A program made the translations under genes and the position numbers. Under the pieces are notes generated by a model. It saw only the letters and a program-made list of their open reading frames with translations. It was not told the DNA's origin and did no database searches. From IMG/VR virus record IMGVR_UViG_3300034358_000008, positions 62,001 through 126,000 of that record: a stretch of 64,000 bases of DNA. One strand, 5' to 3'. This document shows positions 9,853 through 44,270 of the stretch, one piece after another; positions within the stretch are counted from its first letter, which is position 1, and every line of letters begins with the position of its first letter.

Positions 9853-12495
9853 TTAAGCCCCCGTAATAAAGAAGAATGGAGACAGTTCCATCTCTTGGCG
9901 TAGATACAGTTTCAGAACACGACGATAGAAGTCGTATTGATCCTGAGTCAGGCCGATGGGACTAGAGTTCCAATGTGGATATACTTTCACATGGTTGGTG
10001 TTGTAATCGTGGTTAAGAATGTCAAGTGGTTTTAGCCACTCATACGACTTCATCAAGTTCACGATATCCATGTCGGTGTAACGACCATTTACAAAAGGAG
10101 GTTTCAGTCGTCCCTTCAGCATATCTTGCACGACTTTATTCGAGAACGCCGAGTAGACGTGATAGTGGTTAGTGAACACATCAGGGTTTGGACGATCCCG
10201 TTTAGGGAAGTAGTAACCCATTACCTCACTCGTTATCCGATCACGTTCATCATCTTCCACACGGGCTTTGGTATCGTCTTTAAAGACGGTCTTCAAGGTA
10301 ACCTGTGGAGTTTGAATCTGGTAAGGAGAACCATTACGTTCACCCTCAACTACTCGACCATTACGGTCTTCTTCGAATACCACATCGCGATAGTCTTTGT
10401 AGTGGCCATCAACGATAATCCGCTGCATTTTGTGTGAGTGTATATGGTACTGTGAATCGTTAGACAACACGCCGTACTCAACAAACCCAAACTCAGCTGG
10501 ATCGTAACGCTTCATGTCTGGAGAACAGAACCCAGTGCCGCGCAACAGAACCTTCTGCAAACCGTCTTCACGGTACTCGAGGTTATGGATGCCAATCAAC
10601 TCTTCGCTAATCAGATAGTCCAACCCTTGGATCACAGGACGATAGTTAAAGAACGCATCGAGTTGCCCGAAAGGGATCTCCATGGTTTTATTAACCAACT
10701 GACCGTTCTGTTGTTCCCAAGCTGAGATAGCCAACCGAATAACACCTGGGTCATCGTTAAAAACGAATTCCTTAAGGTAGAAATACTCGTCAGTTCTCAG
10801 GTAGCCAAGCCATTCAGTTGCAGGAGCTGTCCACACCCAACGAGGTGCATACAGATCGTCTACGAAATAACCCCAGTCACCACGGTTAGGCAGATCGGTA
10901 ATGTCCTGCCATTCATTGGTAGGTACACCACCCCAAACTTTGGTTACATACACACGGAAGTTATAGCCGTACTTCAAAGCTACTTCACTGTTACCGTAAT
11001 AACCATTCAGGTTGTCTGAACCTTTACCGGTGACACATTCAACCAGCACACAACGGATGTTCTTAGGGACATAAACCTGACCACCCACGTGATAATGGTA
11101 TTCGAGTAGAACGCCCTTATCGTCGTATTCAAAGCACGTTGCGTTCCGCCAGTAGTAGTACGCCAATCTTGCCATGCGAACGCCCGTATGGGGGTCTACG
11201 ACAACCTTAGCGGGGTTATCGTTCATGAGTTTAGCACACTCGTGATAACCGAAGACTTCACCAGCAAAGTTCTGTGCATCTACCTTACCTTGATGGTTTA
11301 GTTCAGGGATGTTAAAGGTGATCGGATAGATGAAGCTAGGTTTGGCCGACATGAACTGAGCATAGTAGGATCGCTCCAAGTTCTCAGCACGCCATAGTGG
11401 GTTAAGAGCATCAACACCTGTCATGTTCCGAAGGATCTGATCAGAGGTCAGTCGATACAGTTCCCAGATACGGTGAGCATCTGCAACCAAAGGACGTTGA
11501 TAACCACCATCACGAATGTACAACTTAACGTACATGTCTTCGATACCAGTCCACTCAGGAGTCAATGTAATAAACTCTTGAATGCGACTAACGGAGATAC
11601 TGTAATCCTTGTGGGTCAGTTGTCTCAGCCAAGTCCCTTGGTTATGGTGATAAGCCAAACCTTTGAACTGTTGTGCAGTTGGACCCTGCTTAACCAGCAA
11701 CGCCGTGATGTCATCATAGAAATCGATCTGATCAGTTTGTCCCGGATAATGCAGGATGTACTTACGTTGAGTATCCAGAGTACTGTTAAATACTTGGAGG
11801 TCAGAGATCTTGAAGTCAACCACTTTCTTAATGGTTGGATCTAGGATGAAATCACAAAGATCACCGGGTACAGCAGTTACAACACTGATCTCATTAACAG
11901 CTTTACCGTTAACGAAGTACATACCCACACCGCCATCAGCGATGATTCGATCAGAGTTACGGATTTGGAATTGGCGAATCGCTTCGGTATTAGCCGCTAC
12001 GATTGACTCTGCGTGCAACCAACGTTTGTTCTGATCACCACTACGTTCCGATTCATAGAAAGCGTTGTGGTATAGATGCAGATAGATCTGGTTGTCATCC
12101 AATGCAGGGAAGCGGTCGTTAACCTTAACAGCAACCAAAAGGTTCTGTCTTGAGGTAACCATCACGTATGTTTCAGACATGCTGTAACGTACGCCATTGG
12201 TTTGGTATACGCTGGCTAATGTCAGGTTGTCCTTCGCAAGACTCGTCAGGTTGATCCAAGTGTCCTTAGTCTTCGGCATGCCGATATTCGCAGGAATCAC
12301 TTGGCCAATCTGGAAGATATGATAGTAGTCACGATTGGTATTCGTCGGCATGAAGTACCGAGTGTGCTCAACCACGTAATTACCCCGGATGCCGTAGCGC
12401 GGGGTAAGTTGTTGGAGGGCGTACGTGAACTGCTTATCTTGCGTTGGGTTACACCAGACATTATCAATTGCGTAACGCAAGAGATAGTTATCCAT
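9853..12495 (-). CDS. Large virion structural protein (phiKZ gp27-like)
   Basis: 880 aa; N-terminus YAIDNVWCNP; synteny. Confidence 0.7.
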   Translation of the reverse strand: MDNYLLRYAIDNVWCNPTQDKQFTYALQQLTPRYGIRGNYVVEHTRYFMPTNTNRDYYHIFQIGQVIPANIGMPKTKDTWINLTSLAKDNLTLASVYQTNGVRYSMSETYVMVTSRQNLLVAVKVNDRFPALDDNQIYLHLYHNAFYESERSGDQNKRWLHAESIVAANTEAIRQFQIRNSDRIIADGGVGMYFVNGKAVNEISVVTAVPGDLCDFILDPTIKKVVDFKISDLQVFNSTLDTQRKYILHYPGQTDQIDFYDDITALLVKQGPTAQQFKGLAYHHNQGTWLRQLTHKDYSISVSRIQEFITLTPEWTGIEDMYVKLYIRDGGYQRPLVADAHRIWELYRLTSDQILRNMTGVDALNPLWRAENLERSYYAQFMSAKPSFIYPITFNIPELNHQGKVDAQNFAGEVFGYHECAKLMNDNPAKVVVDPHTGVRMARLAYYYWRNATCFEYDDKGVLLEYHYHVGGQVYVPKNIRCVLVECVTGKGSDNLNGYYGNSEVALKYGYNFRVYVTKVWGGVPTNEWQDITDLPNRGDWGYFVDDLYAPRWVWTAPATEWLGYLRTDEYFYLKEFVFNDDPGVIRLAISAWEQQNGQLVNKTMEIPFGQLDAFFNYRPVIQGLDYLISEELIGIHNLEYREDGLQKVLLRGTGFCSPDMKRYDPAEFGFVEYGVLSNDSQYHIHSHKMQRIIVDGHYKDYRDVVFEEDRNGRVVEGERNGSPYQIQTPQVTLKTVFKDDTKARVEDDERDRITSEVMGYYFPKRDRPNPDVFTNHYHVYSAFSNKVVQDMLKGRLKPPFVNGRYTDMDIVNLMKSYEWLKPLDILNHDYNTNHVKVYPHWNSSPIGLTQDQYDFYRRVLKLYLRQEMELSPFFFITGA

Positions 12496-13579: not shown

Positions 13580-15688
13580 ATGGCAACTTTCACTAATGCG
13601 GTCCCGCGGGTTGTATTTAACGGGATTCGCGATCGTAGTCGTCGGGCGTTGATTCGTCCAGATGAAACCTACGCTCAACACACCCCCTTGCTGCGTCTCT
13701 TCACTGAGACTGGTCCGACCGCCACAACTTACGTTGGCGATACCGATGATGGCTTTGCTGGCATCTATGGTCAGATGTCGCTCGATCCACGTAGCAAGTA
13801 CTTTAACCAACAATCGCTTCTTGCTCTGAACCTCCTGGGTCAGGGTAATGGTTTCTATGTAAAACGTCTGCGTCCAGAAGATGCTGGTAACTCGGCACGT
13901 TTGATTCTGGCCATCGACATGGTTCGTGATATGGTACCTAAGGCAGTAACTCGCCTGAGCGGTTTCCTGTATCCCGACACAACTACCACAGGTGTTAGCG
14001 GCGGTGTAACCACCCTGGCTGACCAACTGGTAGAAGGCTTGAAGGCTCGCATCGTTTTGATTGTAGACAACGATTCTGAAGTCGGTACTCAGCGCGTTCT
14101 GCCTGGTACTATGGTTTCGAGCATCGATGGTACTCAGTCGACTATGTATCCTCTGATGGAACTGCCAACCAGTTTCTTCGGTGCCTTGGGTAATAACCTC
14201 GGTATGCGTATCTGGTCTCCAACTGCTATGGATACCGAAGGGTACGATGAGCAGGCAACTGATCAGTTCGACACCCGTATGTATCGTGTTCAGTTCGTAG
14301 AGCTGATGAACGGTCTCAACACTCCGCAGATCATCAAGACTGCACTGGGTGAAGACTACGTGAACGTTTCCTTTGATGAAGGCGTTTATTCGGAGTCTAC
14401 TGACCGCGACCTGACTATCGACCAAGTGTTGATTGCTCAGTACGAAGATGACGGTATCGAGAACGGTTTGACTCCTATGTTCTCGCCTTTCAGCCAGGTG
14501 TTCGTATATCGCGAAAACATCAGTATGGTTCAACAACTTATCTGGGATTCGGAATTGCTGGCTAACCCAGCCTTCTCTGATCAGGTAAAAGGTCCGGGTC
14601 AAATCGACTTCCTGACCATGTTGGATTTCAGCGGTGATCCGTACATGACAGTTCAACTGTTGGGTGCTTTGGATGGCGGCGTGCTGCTTGGTAAGAATGC
14701 TACAGTATTCGCTGTTGGCGGTTCTGACGGTTCTACCACCTTCGACAACTACGTTGCCCTGACTGACTTGGAGAACACCAACTTCGGTCAACTGGAAGAT
14801 CAGTACGAAGACATCGCGCGTTACCAATTCGGCTTCATCTACGATACTGGTCTGCCTCTGGCTTCCAAGTACAAGATGATGCAAGTTCTGGGTGCTCGTC
14901 GTGACCTGTATTGCATGTTCTCTACCTTCGTTGAAACCGATGCTCGTGGCCTGTCCACTAGTGATGAAGTTTCTCGTTGCATCGCGATCATGACTCGTCT
15001 GAAAGCTTTCCCTGAGTCGACCCTTTACGGTACTCCTGTTTGCCGGGCATCTATTGTTCTGCAATCCGGTAAGCTGATGGGTAGCAACTACACCAAGCGT
15101 GTTCCACAAGTGCTTGACGTTGCAATGGCTTGGGCTAAGTATGCTGGTGCTGGTAACGGTATCCTGCGTCCGGGTCTGGAAATGGATCAATCTCCGAACA
15201 ACGAGGTTAATTTCGTTAAGTCGTTGAACGTTCCGTTCTTCAATGCTCGTGTAGCTTCCAACCTGTGGGTTAACGGTGCAACCACATCGACTACCTACAA
15301 TAAGCGTCGTCAGTACTACGCTTGCCATCGCTCGGTTATGCTCGACGATACTTCGGTATTGCTGTCGCCGGTGACTGTGAACATCTGCTGCGTGATCATG
15401 CGTTTGATCCACAAGATCCACGCCAAGTTCTCGGGTAACGCTTCCCTGACTAAAGAACAACTTGTAGAGCGCTGTGACCAGGAAATTCTGGATATCACTC
15501 GTGACCTGTTCGGTGGTCGTGTGGATATCACTCCTCGGACTGAGATCACCCCAATCGACGACAACAATGGCTTCAGTTGGACTTGCACCGTTACCGTTGC
15601 GGCTAATAACCCACGTACGGTCATGAACTTCAAGCTGGAAACTGTTCGTCGCGAAGCTGCTACCGAAGGTACTGTTGGCACTGTATAA
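13580..15688 (+). CDS. Tail sheath protein (phiKZ gp29-like)
   Basis: 702 aa; N-terminus [15 protein letters not shown]; YDTG motif; followed by a tube-sized gene. Confidence 0.85.
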
Positions 15689-15728: not shown

Positions 15729-16604
15729 ATGAAACGCTATAATGATCCAATGGCTCCCGTAACTGGTTACGGTGCGGGTGGTCCTAAGAACACCATTAAC
15801 GTGAGTCAGGCAGGTACGGACGTCATGCGTCCAGACTTGGCTAACCTTGCGAGTAACACTCCGTATGTAAGCCGTAACGCTATTCCTTTCCTGCTTGAAG
15901 CTCCTCGGTTCTTCCAGTATGCCAAGGACCCTAAGCAATTGGTTCGTTCTCTGAAAGCCCTGATTGAAAACCATGTTCGGACTATCGACGGTCTGCAACA
16001 GACGATTCAGGTTGATACTGCGGATGCCCCTTGGGGTGGTTCGGGTGAAGCCATTCAGGTAGCCACCAACGTTACCCGTGCACGTTCTAACCCGTCGTTG
16101 GGTTGCTGGGAACTGCAAGGTCGAGCCATTCAGCGTTTCTTGCGCTGGTGGATCACTTACGGTATCGCTGATGAGAACACCAAAGTTCCACGTATCGTTG
16201 CTGAAGGTAACGTTCCAGTAGAGAAGTACGATGCCACCTTCTACGGTGCTACAGTACTGTTCATCGAACCGGACCCAACCTTCCAAGACGTAACCAGTGC
16301 ATATCTGTGTACTAACATGTTCCCTCTTTCCACTGGTCCATGGGAGTCCCGTAAGGATGCTTCCCAGATTGGTCAGAACCTCGATCTCTCGATTGAGTTT
16401 GCTGCCATGACTGACGTATCGGAAGGCGTGATCATGTACGCACGTGAACTGTTCCAGCGTATGAACATCCGTGGTATGAACCCTAACGATCAACGCACTT
16501 GGACCGAAGGCATCAGTGCCAACGTTAATGCTGCGAACATCGGTCTCAAGCAACAACTTGAGCGTTCTGCTACTAACCGTGTGACTTACAACGGGGTTGA
16601 CTAA
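15729..16604 (+). CDS. Tail tube protein (phiKZ gp30-like)
   Basis: 291 aa immediately after the sheath gene. Confidence 0.8.
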
Positions 16605-39455: not shown

Positions 39456-40310
39456 ATGAACCAACCACGCACAATCGGAATGATGATTAACCATCATGAG
39501 ATCGAACACACTTTGACTTCAATGGCAGATGTGATTCGTAACGCAGCCTACAAAGTTGCCACAGCCAGATATCCAATCGGTCATAGTCAACGAGATGAGT
39601 TCTTCGATGAAACAGGAACTCTATTGGCTTACGACGAGATGTCGATTAAAAGCTTACTCAAAGATGCACTGGAACATTACCTTCAATTCAATGCGGGTAT
39701 GCAGAATCCGCAGGCAATCGAATTCAACTATTACCTGAGTGATACATTCAAGCTGGTCCATGATCACATCAACTCGGAACCACACGTACTGAGTTTCCTT
39801 TCAGCTCAGTTCGCGATGGCGTGTGGTAATCTAGCTGGGATGTTATCTCCAGTTATAGAAGACCTGTCTCGTAGCGGACAAGGGATTGAGAAGGTTGAAT
39901 CGTTTACCATGAATACGGATGAATCCTATTACTTGGTGTACGGTGAGAATCATGAGAGTGTTGAAACTTACGATCCCAAAGACGATGATCTCAAGAGTAT
40001 GGTGATTAACGATACTCCAGAAGTCCTAGCTAACTGGGAAGTAAAGAAAAGACAAATCCGTGAGCAGGAAGATAACCAAGCGTATGGCGAATACACTAAA
40101 GCCCTTAAGAAAGCAGTAGATGAAGCAATCGATAACCCAACTCAACCATTGTGGAAAACGACTATCCCAAGGGTTCGTTTCAACGGTATTAGGGATACCT
40201 CGGTATTACCTATCATTGAAGCGCACCATGGTCCTACTGAACACGGCCATAGTTGGGGCGTCAACGTTACTATGCCACCTGCCATATTCCCGGAGCTAGG
40301 ATTAAAATGA
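39456..40310 (+). CDS. Hypothetical protein with a C-terminal tail-sheath-like peptide
   Basis: IPRVRFNGIRDTS matches the sheath N-terminus [13 protein letters not shown]. Confidence 0.65.
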   Translation: MNQPRTIGMMINHHEIEHTLTSMADVIRNAAYKVATARYPIGHSQRDEFFDETGTLLAYDEMSIKSLLKDALEHYLQFNAGMQNPQAIEFNYYLSDTFKLVHDHINSEPHVLSFLSAQFAMACGNLAGMLSPVIEDLSRSGQGIEKVESFTMNTDESYYLVYGENHESVETYDPKDDDLKSMVINDTPEVLANWEVKKRQIREQEDNQAYGEYTKALKKAVDEAIDNPTQPLWKTTIPRVRFNGIRDTSVLPIIEAHHGPTEHGHSWGVNVTMPPAIFPELGLK

Positions 40311-40732
40311 TAGCCGTCACTAATTTGTTCATTGTAGGTGAACCTACGAATGGACCTTTCTTAGCTCAGCGATTCGTCACTGAGTTCGAACAACGTAAAA
40401 AGGAGATACACCATGACGTCGATTATCCAGAAGACCCCATGGTACAGAAGGTAATCGATTTCACGATAGCGAATGGTTTAGACCTGAGGAGGTTCCAGCG
40501 TAATGTCATCGATACATTCGATCAATATGCAATGACGTTCTTCGATGATGATCTGGTAGAGCAACTCATTGAAGAAGGTGAGTCTCCAGACATGCATGAC
40601 GTTATTCAGATCATCGCTGAGTTCCAGACTGAGAACCCAGGCTACATCGTGCAGAGTCTAATACCTTTGGATCTCAAGGGTGCATTCGGTTACGTAGTTA
40701 AGGCGACTCCAAATGGAAATACCGAAGTATAG
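40307..40732 (+). CDS. Hypothetical protein, paralog of 40713-41168
   Basis: Shared GP..A.R and PLDxxGxFG[YF]VV motifs. Confidence 0.65.
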   Translation: MIAVTNLFIVGEPTNGPFLAQRFVTEFEQRKKEIHHDVDYPEDPMVQKVIDFTIANGLDLRRFQRNVIDTFDQYAMTFFDDDLVEQLIEEGESPDMHDVIQIIAEFQTENPGYIVQSLIPLDLKGAFGYVVKATPNGNTEV

Positions 40733-41168
40733 CTTTATCACGATGGTTCCTTGGGCTGGACCTATCATGGCTGAACGTTGGAAGATTGATCTAACTGAAG
40801 CCATGGGACGGGTAATCGAAGAATACGAGTTCTTGATGAAACGTCATGCGGCACCTAAAGGTGACTTCAGTATCTACAGTCGTATGGCCCAATGTAAGTC
40901 AAAGGCTGAACTAGCTATCGAACTGATGAACGTATCAGTCTCACTCTTCGATTCGTTTCAGTATGAGATCCGTGATACTTACCGTGAAAACTTCAGGGAT
41001 ACCCATTACCCAGATGAGTTCTTTGAATGTGCTGATACGGTATCAGTTAAGGAAATCTTGACAGAGTTCTACAAGTTACATCCTGAAGTAACGGTCGTTA
41101 CTATGATGCCATTAGACTTCGATGGAACGTTTGGATTCGTAGTTATCCCCAAAGATATGAATCCATAA
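40713..41168 (+). CDS. Hypothetical protein, paralog of 40307-40732
   Basis: Same shared motifs. Confidence 0.65.
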   Translation: MEIPKYSFITMVPWAGPIMAERWKIDLTEAMGRVIEEYEFLMKRHAAPKGDFSIYSRMAQCKSKAELAIELMNVSVSLFDSFQYEIRDTYRENFRDTHYPDEFFECADTVSVKEILTEFYKLHPEVTVVTMMPLDFDGTFGFVVIPKDMNP

Positions 41169-41183
41169 ACAATCGGTATCATC

Positions 41184-41591
41184 ATGGCAACTATTCAAGA
41201 GATCCCTATTGGGACAGTAATCTCCTTCGAGGTATACCCATCTGCCCAGTACGGTAACGACTTTAAAGCGGTAACCCTACAGGCCGTGTTCGATGCCAAC
41301 ATTGCACGTATGCTTGGTTTCGACGTAGTATCCGCTAACCAAAACGTTTACCAGTCTCTGCCATCAGGGACGCCGGTAGACCCAACCCAGTACAGCTACT
41401 TCCAGATCCGCTATGCTTCTGGGGAGACTCAGATCCTTGGCGTACCTTGGATTCGTTCTGGTACCCTATCGGTTCATAACGGTAAACGTCTGACTATGGT
41501 GTTCGACGACTTTGATGAAGTACGTAAGGATCGTATCTTGGCTGCCGTTAAGGCACAGGGTGAAAATCCTAACTCGGTTACTTTTGTTTAA
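41184..41591 (+). CDS. Conserved phiKZ-like protein (gp49-like)
   Basis: 135 aa; synteny upstream of the polymerase gene. Confidence 0.55.
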   Translation: MATIQEIPIGTVISFEVYPSAQYGNDFKAVTLQAVFDANIARMLGFDVVSANQNVYQSLPSGTPVDPTQYSYFQIRYASGETQILGVPWIRSGTLSVHNGKRLTMVFDDFDEVRKDRILAAVKAQGENPNSVTFV

Positions 41592-42110: not shown

Positions 42111-44270
42111 ATGGAACAAACTCACACCGATGTAAAACCAAATCCTTTTTACCAAGACATTTCTGAGTATCACCGCGAACTTGAAATCGTTAACCCACTG
42201 ATGCGTGACACAGCGCTGTATCTTTCGAGCATGACCGGAGATGATCTGGACAAGTGCTTGGCTTTCGTACAGTCGTCTATGGCCCCCGGTGGTCAGTTCG
42301 AGCTTAATGATCCTAAGACAATGATTCTGGATAAAGGTGAGAATGGTGATCGGGAGAAGAAGGTTATCCGGTTCAGCCAGTATCTAGGTCGAGTAAAGAA
42401 ACAGAACCTATTGCTCTCACCTAGTATGACCGTCTATTTACCAGAAGAAGTAAGAGCATCTACACATGCCAAGTACATCGAAGAAGGCGTTGCTAATCGT
42501 AAAGCAGTTAAGAAAGAGCAGATGCGGTTGGAAGGTGAGGGTACAACTGAAGCACTCGAATTAGCCCAAGTTCGTAAAGGCGAACAAGAGAACTTCAAAA
42601 TCAACAATAACTCCTACTCAGGAGCTACCGTTAGTGCTGCAACGATTCTCTACTACAAGTCTACTCACTCGAGCCTGACCTCTACTTGCCGTACTGCAAC
42701 TTCTTATGCTAACGCAAACAATGAGAAGTTCATCATGGGTAACCGTCACTACTACTCCCCAGAAGTGACTAAAGCTAACATGTTGAGTCTGGTCAATAAC
42801 ACTGACTTGAAACAACTTGAAGCTTGCATGCAGAAGTTCAAGATGCACTACCCAACAGCAGACGAGATCATCGACATGATTCTCTACTCGACTGCTCACT
42901 ACTGGTCCAACCCTGACTACACTGCACAGCTGCGTAAACTTGCAGCTGGTATGTCCCCGATTGGCCGTGCAGCTATCATGTACGTCGGTGACCTCTACCA
43001 TACTTACAAATACAACCCTACTTTGGTTAAGGGTTTCTTGAATGAGTTGTCGAGTGTTGGTACACCAGATAAAATTGTATCTAAAGAACAATACAACAAA
43101 TACGATGGCGACATGCAGTTGCTGGCAAGCTTCATTAACTTTGATATGATCAAAGGTCGTAACAACGAAAAGCTCGCTGAAGAAAACCCGGAAGTGTTTG
43201 ATCTGATCTACGCTACCGGTAACAATATCTCCCTAGTGTTGAATAAGTACGTTCTATTTATCAAGGCATTGTTCCTGACTAAGAACGTTCCTCCAAGCAT
43301 CCATGCATTCCCGACAGCTTATCGTCGTGCTGCCGTAATCTCAGACACTGACTCTACTATGTTCACCATGCAATACTGGGTGGAAGAGTTCTTTGGTCGA
43401 GTTACCTTTAGTGATGAAGCCAAGCGTCTGGTATTTGCTTTGGTGTTCTTGGTGTCCGAAGTGGTCATGCACATTCTGGCATTGCAGTCGATCAACATGG
43501 GCGTTACGTCCAAGAAGCTTCGTCTGCTCGCTATGAAGAACGAATACTACTTCGCAGTACTTAGTCTGACTACCCGCTCGAAACACTACTACGCGTCTCA
43601 GGATGCGGTAGAGGGTATCATGTTTGCTAAGGCCCGTATGGAAGTGAAGGGTGTTGGTCTACGAGACTCTAAGGTTCCGCCACGTATCAACAAAGCTGCT
43701 AAGAAGATGATGGAACACGTCATCACCACGATCAAACGTGAAGAGACGTTGGATCTTCCAGCCATGCTTAAGCAGATTGGCGACATCGAACGAAACATTA
43801 TGACTTCGATCTATACCGGTAAAGCGGAATACCTGACCACCGGTAAGGTTAAGAAGATTGATGCTTATAAATCGGAAGCTAACGCTACTTACGCTAAGTA
43901 CAAGTTCTGGAAAGAAGTGTTCGAACCTAGCTTTGGTTTCTTGGAAGCGCCGCCATACTCCTTCGTTAAGATCTCCGTGACTATCGATAACCGTACTCGT
44001 TTTGAGGCATGGATCGAAACTATCGAAGATAAGCCATTGGCCATGCGATTGAAGAAGTGGGCTTTGGAGAACAACAAGAAAGGCATCACTAACTTCCACG
44101 TACCAATGTCTGTGGTTGAGAACCATGGTATTCCTGAGGTTATCACCCGCGTAGCAAACGTACGTCAAACTATCGCTAACACGATGGGTAGCTTCTATCT
44201 GATCATGGAGTCCTTAGGGATCATGCTTCAGGATAAGAAGAACACCCGTCTCATTTCGGACTTTTACTGA
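42111..44270 (+). CDS. Family B DNA polymerase subunit (phiKZ gp50-like)
   Basis: Motif B KINNNSYSG, motif C ISDTDS, KHYY...EVKGV; GGAGG RBS. Confidence 0.88.
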   Translation: MEQTHTDVKPNPFYQDISEYHRELEIVNPLMRDTALYLSSMTGDDLDKCLAFVQSSMAPGGQFELNDPKTMILDKGENGDREKKVIRFSQYLGRVKKQNLLLSPSMTVYLPEEVRASTHAKYIEEGVANRKAVKKEQMRLEGEGTTEALELAQVRKGEQENFKINNNSYSGATVSAATILYYKSTHSSLTSTCRTATSYANANNEKFIMGNRHYYSPEVTKANMLSLVNNTDLKQLEACMQKFKMHYPTADEIIDMILYSTAHYWSNPDYTAQLRKLAAGMSPIGRAAIMYVGDLYHTYKYNPTLVKGFLNELSSVGTPDKIVSKEQYNKYDGDMQLLASFINFDMIKGRNNEKLAEENPEVFDLIYATGNNISLVLNKYVLFIKALFLTKNVPPSIHAFPTAYRRAAVISDTDSTMFTMQYWVEEFFGRVTFSDEAKRLVFALVFLVSEVVMHILALQSINMGVTSKKLRLLAMKNEYYFAVLSLTTRSKHYYASQDAVEGIMFAKARMEVKGVGLRDSKVPPRINKAAKKMMEHVITTIKREETLDLPAMLKQIGDIERNIMTSIYTGKAEYLTTGKVKKIDAYKSEANATYAKYKFWKEVFEPSFGFLEAPPYSFVKISVTIDNRTRFEAWIETIEDKPLAMRLKKWALENNKKGITNFHVPMSVVENHGIPEVITRVANVRQTIANTMGSFYLIMESLGIMLQDKKNTRLISDFY

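What the first reader, a model, noticed from the sequence alone, without database searches (positions are those of the whole stretch)
40164..40271. Tail-sheath N- and C-terminal mimic at the end of an early protein
The ORF 39456-40310 ends with IPRVRFNGIRDTS, 10/13 identical to the sheath N-terminus [13 protein letters not shown] (13601-13639) with largely different codons. It is followed by TEHGHSWGVNVT, echoing the sheath C-terminal [12 protein letters not shown] (~15560-15595). Sheath termini typically mediate inter-subunit strand exchange. An early-expressed copy of both ends could cap or poison sheath polymers or act as a sensor decoy. Weaker echoes of the gp27-like protein also occur (AIDNPTQ vs AIDNVWCNPTQ; FDETGTLLAY vs YDDKGVLLEY).
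Basis: partly seen in the sequence, partly recalled or inferred. Interest (0 to 1): 0.8.

Follow-up and report, generated by a model that had tools for sequence, protein, structure and literature searches.

The report
Tail-sheath arm copy on Imp2
A jumbo phage's nuclear-import factor (an Imp2 homologue) ends in a floppy tail carrying a conserved, selected copy of the short peptide arm that tail-sheath subunits use to grip each other, and the same peptide sits on two other non-virion phage proteins, hinting at an undescribed link between tail assembly and the phage nucleus.

Summary
The C-terminal and "gp27" echoes are not supported.

- **The gene.** ORF 39456-40310 is the homologue of phiKZ gp47 / PhiPA3 gp44, known as Imp2. 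Imp2 is the cargo-specific factor for importing the UvsX recombinase into the phage nucleus. Here it carries an extra ~100-residue C-terminal extension.
- **The tail.** AlphaFold2 gives residues 233-284 very low confidence, so they are probably disordered. Within them, PRVxFNGIxDT copies the sheath N-terminal extension (sheath residues 1-20), the arm that docks on a subunit in the ring below.
- **Significance.** One sequence against one sequence is near chance. Family profiles are not: tail profile to sheath E=2.8e-7, reciprocal E=9e-4.
- **Conservation.** All eight closest orthologues, a single clade, keep the motif. Its pN/pS is 0.19, against 0.52-0.66 in the flanks.
- **Other carriers.** The motif also occurs in a protein family encoded next to uvsX (201phi2-1 gp236) and on the C-terminal tail of Psa21 ChmB.

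Most likely mechanism, inferred and not shown: the tail docks by beta-strand addition into the sheath's arm-acceptor site. This would cap or tether unpolymerised sheath.

The parts
39456..40310 (+). Imp2 homologue (284 aa): orthologue of 201phi2-1 gp79, homologue of phiKZ gp47 (Imp2) and PhiPA3 gp44
   Evidence: phrog_17816 covers residues 4-175 only. tblastn and six-frame searches hit PhiPA3 gp044 (E=1.3e-19) and PHIKZ047 (E=1.3e-12). 201phi2-1 gp79 is annotated 'similar to phiKZ gp47'. Imp2 function is from bioRxiv 10.1101/2024.03.27.586873.
39456..39980 (+). Folded N-terminal domain (residues 1-175), the part shared with phiKZ Imp2 (178 aa in all)
   Evidence: AF2 pLDDT is mostly 78-91 up to about residue 160, with a dip to 61 at 81-90, falling to 72 by residue 170. 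pN/pS is 0.14. Foldseek against the PDB finds no match at E<=0.001.
40017..40133 (+). Long predicted helix (residues 188-226) joining the domain to the tail
   Evidence: AF2 secondary structure, pLDDT about 59-74. pN/pS is 0.34 for residues 176-232.
40152..40307 (+). C-terminal tail predicted with very low confidence, probably disordered (residues 233-284); lineage-specific and hypervariable apart from two conserved islands
   Evidence: AF2 pLDDT below 50 for 233-284. Alignments A2 and A4. Linker pN/pS is 0.66.
40167..40199 (+). Motif 1, PRVRFNGIRDT (P238-T248): copy of the sheath N-terminal extension arm
   Evidence: P, R, F, N, G, I, D and T are invariant in the 8 orthologues. pN/pS is 0.19 with pS 0.67. 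Profile matches to the sheath.
40245..40271 (+). Conserved in part of the family; its link to the sheath is not supported.
40275..40304 (+). Motif 2, PPAIFPELGL (P274-L283): conserved extreme C-terminus. Its DNA also carries the ribosome-binding region of the next gene (ATGA stop/start overlap at 40307).
   Evidence: pN/pS is 0.17. TTC CCG GAG is invariant at the base level in all 8 orthologues. No other copy exists in the genome. Sequence.
13580..15688 (+). Tail sheath protein (702 aa), phiKZ gp29 homologue
   Evidence: PF20961 E=1.4e-97. phrog_3242. PDB 9xpf (PHIKZ029) E=7.8e-301.
13580..13639 (+). Sheath N-terminal extension arm (residues 1-20), the template of the motif
   Evidence: Aligns to the phiKp24 N-terminal extension M1-S21. 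The first 80 residues are 80-94% identical in the Pseudomonas phages phiKZ, PhiPA3, Phabio, 201phi2-1 and Viktualia. The extensions bind the C-terminal domain of a subunit in the ring below.
15569..15595 (+). Sheath GFSWTCTVT (residues 664-672): last conserved segment of the C-terminal domain, just before the C-terminal extension
   Evidence: The phiKp24 C-extension is A667-G689.
40307..41168 (+). Two paralogous genes (141 and 151 aa, phrog_32675) in the position of phiKZ orf48 (Imp4)
   Evidence: Homology to phiKZ gp48 itself was not found.
41184..41591 (+). SH3DP protein, in the syntenic position of phiKZ gp49 (a baseplate HR1 ring protein in phiKZ); its 201phi2-1 counterpart gp81 is annotated similar to phiKZ gp49
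   Evidence: PF20287 E=3e-41. phiKZ atlas PMC13250141. Annotation and synteny.
42111..44270 (+). Divergent family B DNA polymerase; anchors the synteny with phiKZ 047-050
   Evidence: PF20286, 1011 bits..

Best explanation
ORF 39456-40310 encodes a homologue of Imp2. In phiKZ and PhiPA3, Imp2 is specifically needed to import the UvsX/RecA-like recombinase (Nlp1) into the phage nucleus, and it is itself imported.

In this lineage the Imp2 domain is followed by a long helix and a C-terminal tail that AlphaFold2 predicts with very low confidence, so it is probably disordered. The tail displays a short linear motif, PRVxFNGIxDT[S]. The motif copies the N-terminal extension arm of the phage's own tail sheath protein. 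In the assembled sheath, that arm docks on the C-terminal domain of a subunit in the ring below.

Shown here:
- The gene's identity.
- The motif is real and is kept by protein-level purifying selection.
- It was gained once within the Imp2 family.
- It also sits on two unrelated non-virion protein families.

Inferred:
- The tail docks by beta-strand addition into the arm-acceptor site on the sheath C-terminal domain, or into the equivalent site on the gp25-like sheath initiator. It would compete there with the real arm.
- This would cap or hold unpolymerised sheath subunits or a growing sheath end. The tail terminator gp98 also contacts the top sheath ring, the ring whose acceptor sites are otherwise free, through its C-terminal extension.
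- It could also tether sheath to the carrier protein, coupling sheath availability to the nucleus and import machinery.
For: Identity as Imp2:
- Homology to PHIKZ047 and PhiPA3 gp044.
- Conserved order Imp2, small genes, SH3DP, DNA polymerase.
- Experimental function of Imp2. phiKZ imp2 tolerates no transposon insertions.

The motif is the sheath arm:
- 10/13 identity.
- hhalign 96% probability, E=1.9e-9.
- Reciprocal HMM hits that exclude the window's own sequences: E=2.8e-7 and E=9e-4.
- The arm is assigned from phiKp24 M1-S21 aligned to window M1-S20.

Selection:
- All 8 orthologues at 67-83% BLASTP identity keep the motif while the flanks vary or are deleted.
- pN/pS is 0.19 in the motif, 0.52 and 0.66 in the flanks, and 0.14 in the folded domain. 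pS is about 0.67, so the constraint is on the protein and not on the DNA.
- The carriers form one clade with 100/99 support.

Flexible display:
- pLDDT is below 50 for residues 233-284.
- The same holds for the motif region of the uvsX-adjacent protein.

Recurrence:
- A third copy in the same genome, in the 201phi2-1 gp236 family, where most members and both named phages (201phi2-1, Phabio) keep it.
- A copy on the C-terminal tail of Psa21 ChmB.
- Genome-wide degenerate-pattern scans of 9 phage genomes (8 relatives plus the window's own) find only sheath and these carriers, apart from one stop-containing chance hit in Noxifer. Reversed-pattern controls give 0.
- The motif HMM splits the own genome 3 against the rest.

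Precedent for capping by a terminal extension: phiKZ terminator gp98.
Against: - No binding was tested.
- phiKZ Imp2 is imported into the nucleus, whereas sheath is expected to assemble in the cytoplasm. That makes a stable Imp2-sheath complex awkward.
- Two of the three carrier types have a documented tie to the phage nucleus (Imp2 and ChmB). The third is linked only by lying next to uvsX. This hints that the relevant partner might be a nucleus component and not the sheath.
- phiKZ, PhiPA3 and Viktualia have no such mimic. Erwinia, Xanthomonas and Noxifer relatives have none either (with the positive control). So it is not a general need of sheath assembly.
- In Psa21's closest ChmB relatives the motif is absent or degenerate.
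Confidence: 0.42

Rival explanations
1. The motif is a docking peptide for a third partner that also handles the sheath N-terminus. Candidates are a phage or host chaperone, or a component of the nuclear shell or import system. Imp2, ChmB and the uvsX-adjacent protein would carry it for a nucleus-related reason. The sheath would not be their target.
For: - Two carrier types are tied to the phage nucleus. Imp2 is an import factor for UvsX and ChmB is a shell protein that binds the portal. The third is linked only by its position next to uvsX.
- Sheath N-termini are recognised by accessory proteins in type VI secretion (TagJ, ClpV; PMC4239648, listed; my knowledge for the details).
Against: - No candidate partner is known.
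- The only endogenous template for the motif in the genome is the sheath arm. UvsX, chimallin and every other open frame score below 7 bits.
- The gp236 family's adjacency to uvsX is shared synteny and does not count as independent evidence.
Confidence: 0.25
2. Two-strand mimic. The tail copies both a sheath N-terminal and a sheath C-terminal element, so it either fills the whole handshake site or forms a mini-handshake hairpin.
For: - G[FYH]SW...[VI]T occurs only in the sheath (residues 664-672) and in this tail across the whole genome.
- Distant orthologues P0013 and P0015 have GYSWTADVT, which is 6/9 identical to the sheath segment plus a conservative Y/F.
- The sheath segment is conserved among relatives.
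Against: - Not significant: BLAST E=65 and HMM domain score -2.4 bits.
- My estimate is that a 5/9 match between the tail and some sheath 9-mer is expected about 3 times by chance.
- The element is deleted in P0007 and P0008, which keep motif 1.
- The segment lies before the sheath C-terminal extension, not in it.
- AF2 predicts no hairpin.
Confidence: 0.1
3. Immune decoy. A host defence sensor recognises the conserved sheath arm, and copies of the arm on proteins made before the sheath would titrate or pre-empt that sensor.
For: - The sheath arm is highly conserved: 80-94% identity over the first 80 residues in the Pseudomonas phages phiKZ, PhiPA3, Phabio, 201phi2-1 and Viktualia.
- The motif has been grafted onto different carriers in different lineages. 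That pattern is typical of arms races (inference).
Against: - No defence system known to me senses a sheath N-terminus.
- A decoy that binds a sensor would be expected to trigger it.
- Expression timing was not tested.
- No defence-related genes were seen nearby.
Confidence: 0.06
4. Chance resemblance, or a neutral relic of an old illegitimate recombination with the 5' end of the sheath gene, with no present function.
For: - Single-sequence statistics are weak.
- Imp2 tails are hypervariable.
- In 201phi2-1 the sheath and gp236 motifs share 25/30 bases, which would fit DNA-level copying as the origin.
Against: - pN/pS is 0.19 inside a tail whose flanks are at 0.5-0.66, with synonymous sites near saturation.
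- The motif is retained in all members of a clade.
- It recurs independently in three protein families.
- Reversed-pattern controls are zero.
Confidence: 0.05

Closest known systems
Imp2 (phiKZ gp47 / PhiPA3 gp44), cargo-specific phage-nucleus import factor
   Same: Homologous N-terminal domain and the same genomic position upstream of the gp48-like and gp49-like genes and the DNA polymerase.
   Different: phiKZ Imp2 is 178 aa with no C-terminal extension. The window protein adds a helix and a 52-residue low-confidence tail carrying the sheath-arm motif. Its import function was not tested here.
Sheath N-terminal extension arm of contractile tails (phiKZ gp29, phiKp24 gp118 M1-S21)
   Same: Same sequence pattern, N-x-x-P-R/K-V-x-F-N-G-I-R/K-D-x-S, carried on a flexible terminal segment.
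   Different: It sits at the C-terminus of a protein with no detectable sheath domain, not at the N-terminus of a sheath subunit.
Tail terminator contacting the last sheath ring through a C-terminal extension (phiKZ gp98; T4 gp15-type terminators)
   Same: A C-terminal extension from a non-sheath protein reaches the sheath ring whose arm-acceptor sites are otherwise free. This is the closest analogue for how the tail may work.
   Different: No similarity to terminators was found or tested. The terminator does not carry this motif: pattern scans hit only sheath and the carriers. The terminator is a virion protein. 201phi2-1 gp79 carries no virion mass-spectrometry note, whereas gp81 in the same locus was detected by mass spectrometry and the sheath gp30 is listed as a virion protein.
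ChmB (PhiPA3 gp2), nuclear-shell protein that binds chimallin and the portal
   Same: In phage Psa21 the ChmB homologue ends in an almost identical C-terminal tail motif, APKVEFNGIKDTS, preceded by a helix as in the window protein.
   Different: The fold and family are unrelated (phrog_16439). The window phage's own genome has no such ChmB tail.
Oligomerisation-motif mimicry such as BRCA2 BRC repeats copying the RAD51 FxxA polymerisation motif (my knowledge; analogy only)
   Same: A short peptide copies the strand that a self-assembling protein donates to its neighbour. This lets another protein bind the monomer and control polymerisation.
   Different: Different proteins and sequences. No evidence here that the motif touches UvsX, and UvsX has no similar motif.

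Membership tests
Imp2 (phiKZ gp47 family, phrog_17816) | Sequence homology of the core domain to phiKZ gp47 / PhiPA3 gp44 | tested here: met
   phrog_17816 E=2.7e-46. PhiPA3 gp044 E=1.3e-19 and PHIKZ047 E=1.3e-12.
Imp2 (phiKZ gp47 family, phrog_17816) | Conserved position: gp47-like, gp48-like, gp49-like (SH3DP), DNA polymerase | tested here: met
Imp2 (phiKZ gp47 family, phrog_17816) | Required for nuclear import of the UvsX-like recombinase, and itself imported | not testable with these tools
   Known only from genetics and microscopy in phiKZ and PhiPA3.
Sheath-arm (N-terminal extension) handshake strand | Matches the conserved arm sequence of the cognate sheath | tested here: met
Sheath-arm (N-terminal extension) handshake strand | Located on a flexible terminal extension outside the folded domain | tested here: met
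   AF2 pLDDT below 50 for residues 233-284.
Sheath-arm (N-terminal extension) handshake strand | Docks on the C-terminal domain of a sheath subunit by strand addition | not testable with these tools
   Only monomer prediction is available. No complex modelling or binding assay.
Tail sheath protein (PF20961 / phrog_3242) | Sheath domains present | tested here: not met
   No Pfam hit for the ORF. The only PHROG hits (phrog_17816 plus two marginal ones) are all of unknown function. Similarity to the sheath is limited to about 25 residues.
Tail terminator-type sheath cap (phiKZ gp98) | Virion component that ends sheath growth | tested here: inconclusive
   The 201phi2-1 orthologue gp79 has no virion mass-spectrometry note, whereas gp81 in the same locus was detected by mass spectrometry and the sheath gp30 is listed as a virion protein. 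Homology to gp98 was not tested. The function was not tested.

The most novel reading that the evidence does not exclude
Some nucleus-forming jumbo phages own a portable 'sheath-arm' peptide. They graft it onto flexible regions of proteins tied to the phage nucleus: the import factor Imp2, the shell protein ChmB, and a protein encoded next to uvsX. The peptide binds the handshake site of tail-sheath subunits. This would create a previously unknown cross-talk in which virion tail assembly and the nucleus, import or recombination machinery regulate or localise each other. For example, it could hold sheath monomers in check early, or let abundant late sheath switch off import factors.
Probability: 0.3. 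Interest if true: 0.85.

Novelty: new variant of a known kind. Interest (0 to 1): 0.66.

Why it matters
- How chimalliviruses coordinate events inside the phage nucleus with virion assembly in the cytoplasm is unknown.
- The partners and working of the accessory import factors (Imp2, Imp4, Imp5) are also unknown.
- A selected, portable copy of the sheath's inter-subunit arm on Imp2, ChmB and a uvsX-adjacent protein gives a concrete peptide-level hypothesis. It can be tested in culturable phages: 201phi2-1 gp236 and Psa21 ChmB.
- If the peptide binds the sheath handshake site, it would be the first non-structural regulator of sheath polymerisation that I know of. It would also be a ready-made tool for blocking or labelling contractile sheaths of this family.

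Tried and rejected
- **'gp27-like' echoes** (880-aa ORF 9853-12495, phrog_3184). BLASTP gives E=0.4 for one and no alignment for the other. Rejected as chance.
- **Sheath C-terminal mimic.** Examined with sheath C-termini of five relatives, and found not significant.
- **MAFFT's alignment of motif 2 (PPAIFPELGL) to sheath residues 35-46.** hhalign does not extend there, only 4/13 residues are identical, and the genome holds no other copy of motif 2. Its conservation is partly explained by the overlapping start region of the next gene.
- **More carriers of the ...FNGIxDT class.** IMG/VR gave only the sister genome G001 and Psa21. JGI metagenomes gave 7 hits, all chance-like.
- **Lineage-specific self-mimics in distant chimalliviruses** (Erwinia Special G, Xanthomonas RTH11, Noxifer). 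None found, and the positive control on the window's own genome worked. A fourth weak hit in the own genome is an out-of-frame 42-aa ORF, taken as chance.
- **Mimicry of UvsX's or chimallin's own assembly segments.** No open frame other than the three carriers scores above 7 bits.
- **Foldseek of the Imp2 model against the PDB.** Nothing at E<=0.001.
- **Literature.** No paper in the library mentions 201phi2-1 gp236, and the one search made for a sheath-arm mimic or sheath chaperone returned nothing relevant.

Full report
**Setting.** The window lies in a 324,912-bp virus record rated 100% complete. The phage is phiKZ-like and nucleus-forming. Its sheath (13580-15688, 702 aa) carries PF20961 and matches PHIKZ029 in PDB 9xpf at E=7.8e-301. 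The nearest named relatives are the Pseudomonas phages Viktualia and 201phi2-1, about 45-49% identical (tblastn) for the protein studied here.

**Checking the observation.** The strings and coordinates are exact. IPRVRFNGIRDTS (40164-40202) matches sheath [13 protein letters not shown] (13601-13639) at 10/13 residues but only 23/39 bases. Six of the ten shared residues use different codons, so this is not a recent DNA copy.

Taken alone the match is weak. BLASTP for the pair gives 28 bits, E=5e-4. The 60-residue tail against all 478 ORFs of at least 100 aa in the genome has the sheath as top hit, but only at E=0.015. A reader comparing every protein in a window would meet such a hit by chance. 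The orthologues change this picture.

**What the gene is.**
- PHROG 17816, a 170-position profile, covers only residues 4-175.
- The N-domain matches PhiPA3 gp044 (E=1.3e-19) and PHIKZ047 (E=1.3e-12).
- The 201phi2-1 orthologue gp79 is annotated as similar to phiKZ gp47.
- Gene order is conserved. The ORF is followed by two small paralogous genes, an SH3DP protein in the position of phiKZ gp49, and a divergent family B DNA polymerase.
- phiKZ orf47 is imp2. Mutations in it, or in PhiPA3 orf44, abolish import of the UvsX/RecA-like protein Nlp1 (gp152) into the phage nucleus. Imp2 is itself imported in an Imp1-dependent way (bioRxiv 10.1101/2024.03.27.586873).
- phiKZ imp2 tolerates no transposon insertions.
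- phiKZ Imp2 is 178 aa, so the roughly 100 C-terminal residues of the window protein are a lineage-specific extension.

**Anatomy of the extension.** AlphaFold2 with 28 homologues gives three parts:
- A folded domain up to about residue 170. pLDDT is mostly 78-91 up to about residue 160, with a dip to 61 at 81-90.
- A long helix at residues 188-226.
- Residues 233-284 with pLDDT below 50, probably disordered.

Foldseek finds no PDB relative for the domain.

**Conservation and selection.**
- A protein search found 28 homologues. The eight closest (67-83% BLASTP identity to the query, full coverage, the window's own included) all keep P-R-x-x-F-N-G-I-x-D-T, while the residues before and after vary or are deleted.
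- All six orthologues whose contigs were fetched are syntenic.
- On the codon alignment, synonymous sites are close to saturation (pS about 0.6-0.7). pN/pS is 0.14 in the folded domain, 0.52 just before the motif, 0.19 in the motif, 0.66 in the linker and 0.17 in the last ten residues.
- The motif is therefore kept by selection on the protein.
- The last ten residues are also constrained at the base level. TTC CCG GAG is invariant because they overlap the ribosome-binding region and ATGA start of the next gene.
- In a tree of the N-domain the eight carriers form one clade with 100/99 support, so one gain suffices.
- More distant orthologues, including Viktualia and 201phi2-1, lack the motif. 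Seven of 23 carry a faint hydrophobic-x-D-x-S/T element at a similar place.

**The motif equals the sheath arm.**
- The first 80 sheath residues are 80-94% identical in the Pseudomonas phages phiKZ, PhiPA3, Phabio, 201phi2-1 and Viktualia.
- The published phiKp24 tail model defines the N-terminal extension as M1-S21. It connects to the C-terminal domain of a subunit in the ring below (PMC9700779). Those residues align to window sheath M1-S20.
- Profile comparisons give hhalign 96% probability, E=1.9e-9.
- An HMM of the seven other tails hits the sheath N-terminus at E=2.8e-7. An HMM of sheath N-termini from other phages hits this ORF at E=9e-4. Each is the top non-self hit among 478 ORFs.

**A recurrent, portable motif.** Both HMMs also pick up a third protein, outside the window at G000 230431-230953 on the minus strand (174 aa). 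It contains FMNALPKVNFSGIRDGG.
- It lies directly downstream of the UvsX-like recombinase. It is the syntenic counterpart of 201phi2-1 gp236 and Phabio gp224.
- Those two keep P-R/K-V-x-F-N-G-I/M-R-D-G despite 32-33% identity to it in the 15-sequence alignment A7. Across the 15 family members most keep a recognisable version, about ten with every defining position.
- AF2 also gives the motif region of this protein low confidence.

Degenerate DNA-pattern scans of whole genomes found the following, with reversed-pattern controls all zero:

| Genome | Sites with the motif |
|---|---|
| phiKZ, PhiPA3, Viktualia | sheath only |
| 201phi2-1, Phabio | sheath + gp236 family |
| Window genome, sister genome G001 | sheath + Imp2 tail + gp236 family |
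| Psa21 | sheath + PSA21_2 |
| Noxifer | sheath (plus one stop-containing chance hit) |

PSA21_2 ends in APKVEFNGIKDTS after a helix. It is a homologue of PhiPA3 gp2 (E=1e-16), which is ChmB, the nuclear-shell protein that binds chimallin and the portal. The closest ChmB relatives lack the motif or have a degenerate form.

A motif HMM built from all instances scores the three open frames of the window's genome at 30-35 bits and everything else below 7 bits.

**Parts of the finding that fail.**
- GHSWGVNVT against sheath GFSWTCTVT is not significant. It is absent in two motif-bearing orthologues. It corresponds to the segment before the sheath C-terminal extension, not to the extension.
- The gp27-like echoes are chance.
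- 'Early' expression was not tested.

**Mechanism.**
- Shown: a selected short linear motif, on a tail predicted to be flexible, copies the sheath's donor arm.
- Inferred: it binds what the arm binds, namely the acceptor site on the sheath C-terminal domain or the equivalent site on the sheath initiator. That site is free only on unassembled subunits and on the top ring of a growing sheath. In phiKZ the terminator gp98 contacts that top ring through its own C-terminal extension.
- Consequence: the tail could cap or chaperone sheath, or tether it to its carrier.

The main rival is a shared third partner. Two of the three carrier types are tied to the phage nucleus, the third lies next to uvsX, and Imp2 is imported. 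An immune-decoy role and a neutral relic are less likely; the selection and recurrence data argue against a neutral relic. None of these can be separated without a binding experiment or complex modelling.

**Novelty.** The Imp2 family, the sheath handshake and terminator capping are all known. I found no description of a sheath-arm copy on non-virion, nucleus-linked proteins. The literature checks were limited: no paper in the library mentions 201phi2-1 gp236, one search for a sheath-arm mimic or sheath chaperone returned nothing relevant, and an Imp2/Nlp1 search found only the two papers already cited. I rate it a new variant of a known kind, of fairly high interest.

Noticed in passing
outside the window: G000:C1:230431-230953 (-), = L013:1327-1848:-: A third protein in the same genome (174 aa) carries the sheath-arm motif, ...FMNALPKVNFSGIRDGG, in a low-confidence region. 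It is encoded directly downstream of the UvsX-like recombinase and belongs to the 201phi2-1 gp236 / Phabio gp224 family, where most members keep the motif.
   Followed up: yes
L030:883-1572 (Pseudomonas phage Psa21, PSA21_2): The ChmB (nuclear-shell protein) homologue of Psa21 ends in a helix followed by APKVEFNGIKDTS. This is almost the same tail motif as in the window's Imp2 homologue, on an unrelated fold. It is absent or degenerate in the closest ChmB relatives (RVTF4, D6).
   Followed up: yes
window 40307-40732 and 40713-41168 (+): Two overlapping paralogous genes (141 and 151 aa, BLASTP E=1e-9, phrog_32675) sit where phiKZ has orf48 (Imp4, needed for TopA import). They match the PhiPA3 and 201phi2-1 genes in that position weakly. 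phiKZ gp48 itself was not hit.
   Followed up: partly
window 41184-41591 (+): The SH3DP protein (PF20287, 'associated with phage DNA polymerases') sits in the position of phiKZ gp49, and its 201phi2-1 counterpart gp81 is annotated similar to gp49. The 2026 phiKZ structural atlas places gp49 in the baseplate HR1 ring. So a structural baseplate gene lies among import and replication genes.
   Followed up: partly
window 40275-40310 (+): The extreme C-terminus PPAIFPELGLK is conserved more widely than motif 1. Its codons TTC CCG GAG are invariant at the base level in 8 orthologues, and the stop overlaps the next start (ATGA). Part of the conservation therefore reflects the next gene's ribosome-binding region.
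   Followed up: yes
alignment A2 (proteins P0009, P0010, P0016, P0020, P0025; L001 Viktualia): Other clades of Imp2 homologues carry a different conserved peptide in their tails, (L)P-R/L-HPHI. The Imp2 extension may therefore be a general display platform for short motifs. No copy of that peptide exists in the window's genome.
   Followed up: partly
L016 / L021 (201phi2-1 15877-15906 and 167812-167841): In 201phi2-1 the sheath and gp236 motifs share 25 of 30 bases, more than in the window phage (23/39 for sheath against Imp2 tail). This could mean DNA-level copying from the sheath gene as the origin of the motif.
   Followed up: no
alignment A7 (gp236 family): The uvsX-adjacent family has a nearly invariant N-terminus, MILEVGAGG, and internal repeats of a similar glycine-rich strand-like unit. 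No Pfam family matches, and the only PHROG matches are of unknown function.
   Followed up: no
alignment A2 and (P0012, P0014, P0016, P0025, P0026, Viktualia, 201phi2-1): Seven of 23 distant Imp2 tails have a degenerate hydrophobic-x-D-x-S/T strand-like element (for example LTIADAS, VKVTDQS) at about the place of motif 1. It shares the D-x-S that is invariant in sheath arms. It may be an older, weaker version of the mimic.
   Followed up: partly
window 15569-15595 and 40245-40271: The pattern G[FYH]SW...[VI]T is unique in the 325-kb genome to the sheath (residues 664-672) and the Imp2 tail, yet is statistically unsupported. Whether that sheath segment pairs with incoming arms could be read from PDB 9xpf.
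   Followed up: partly
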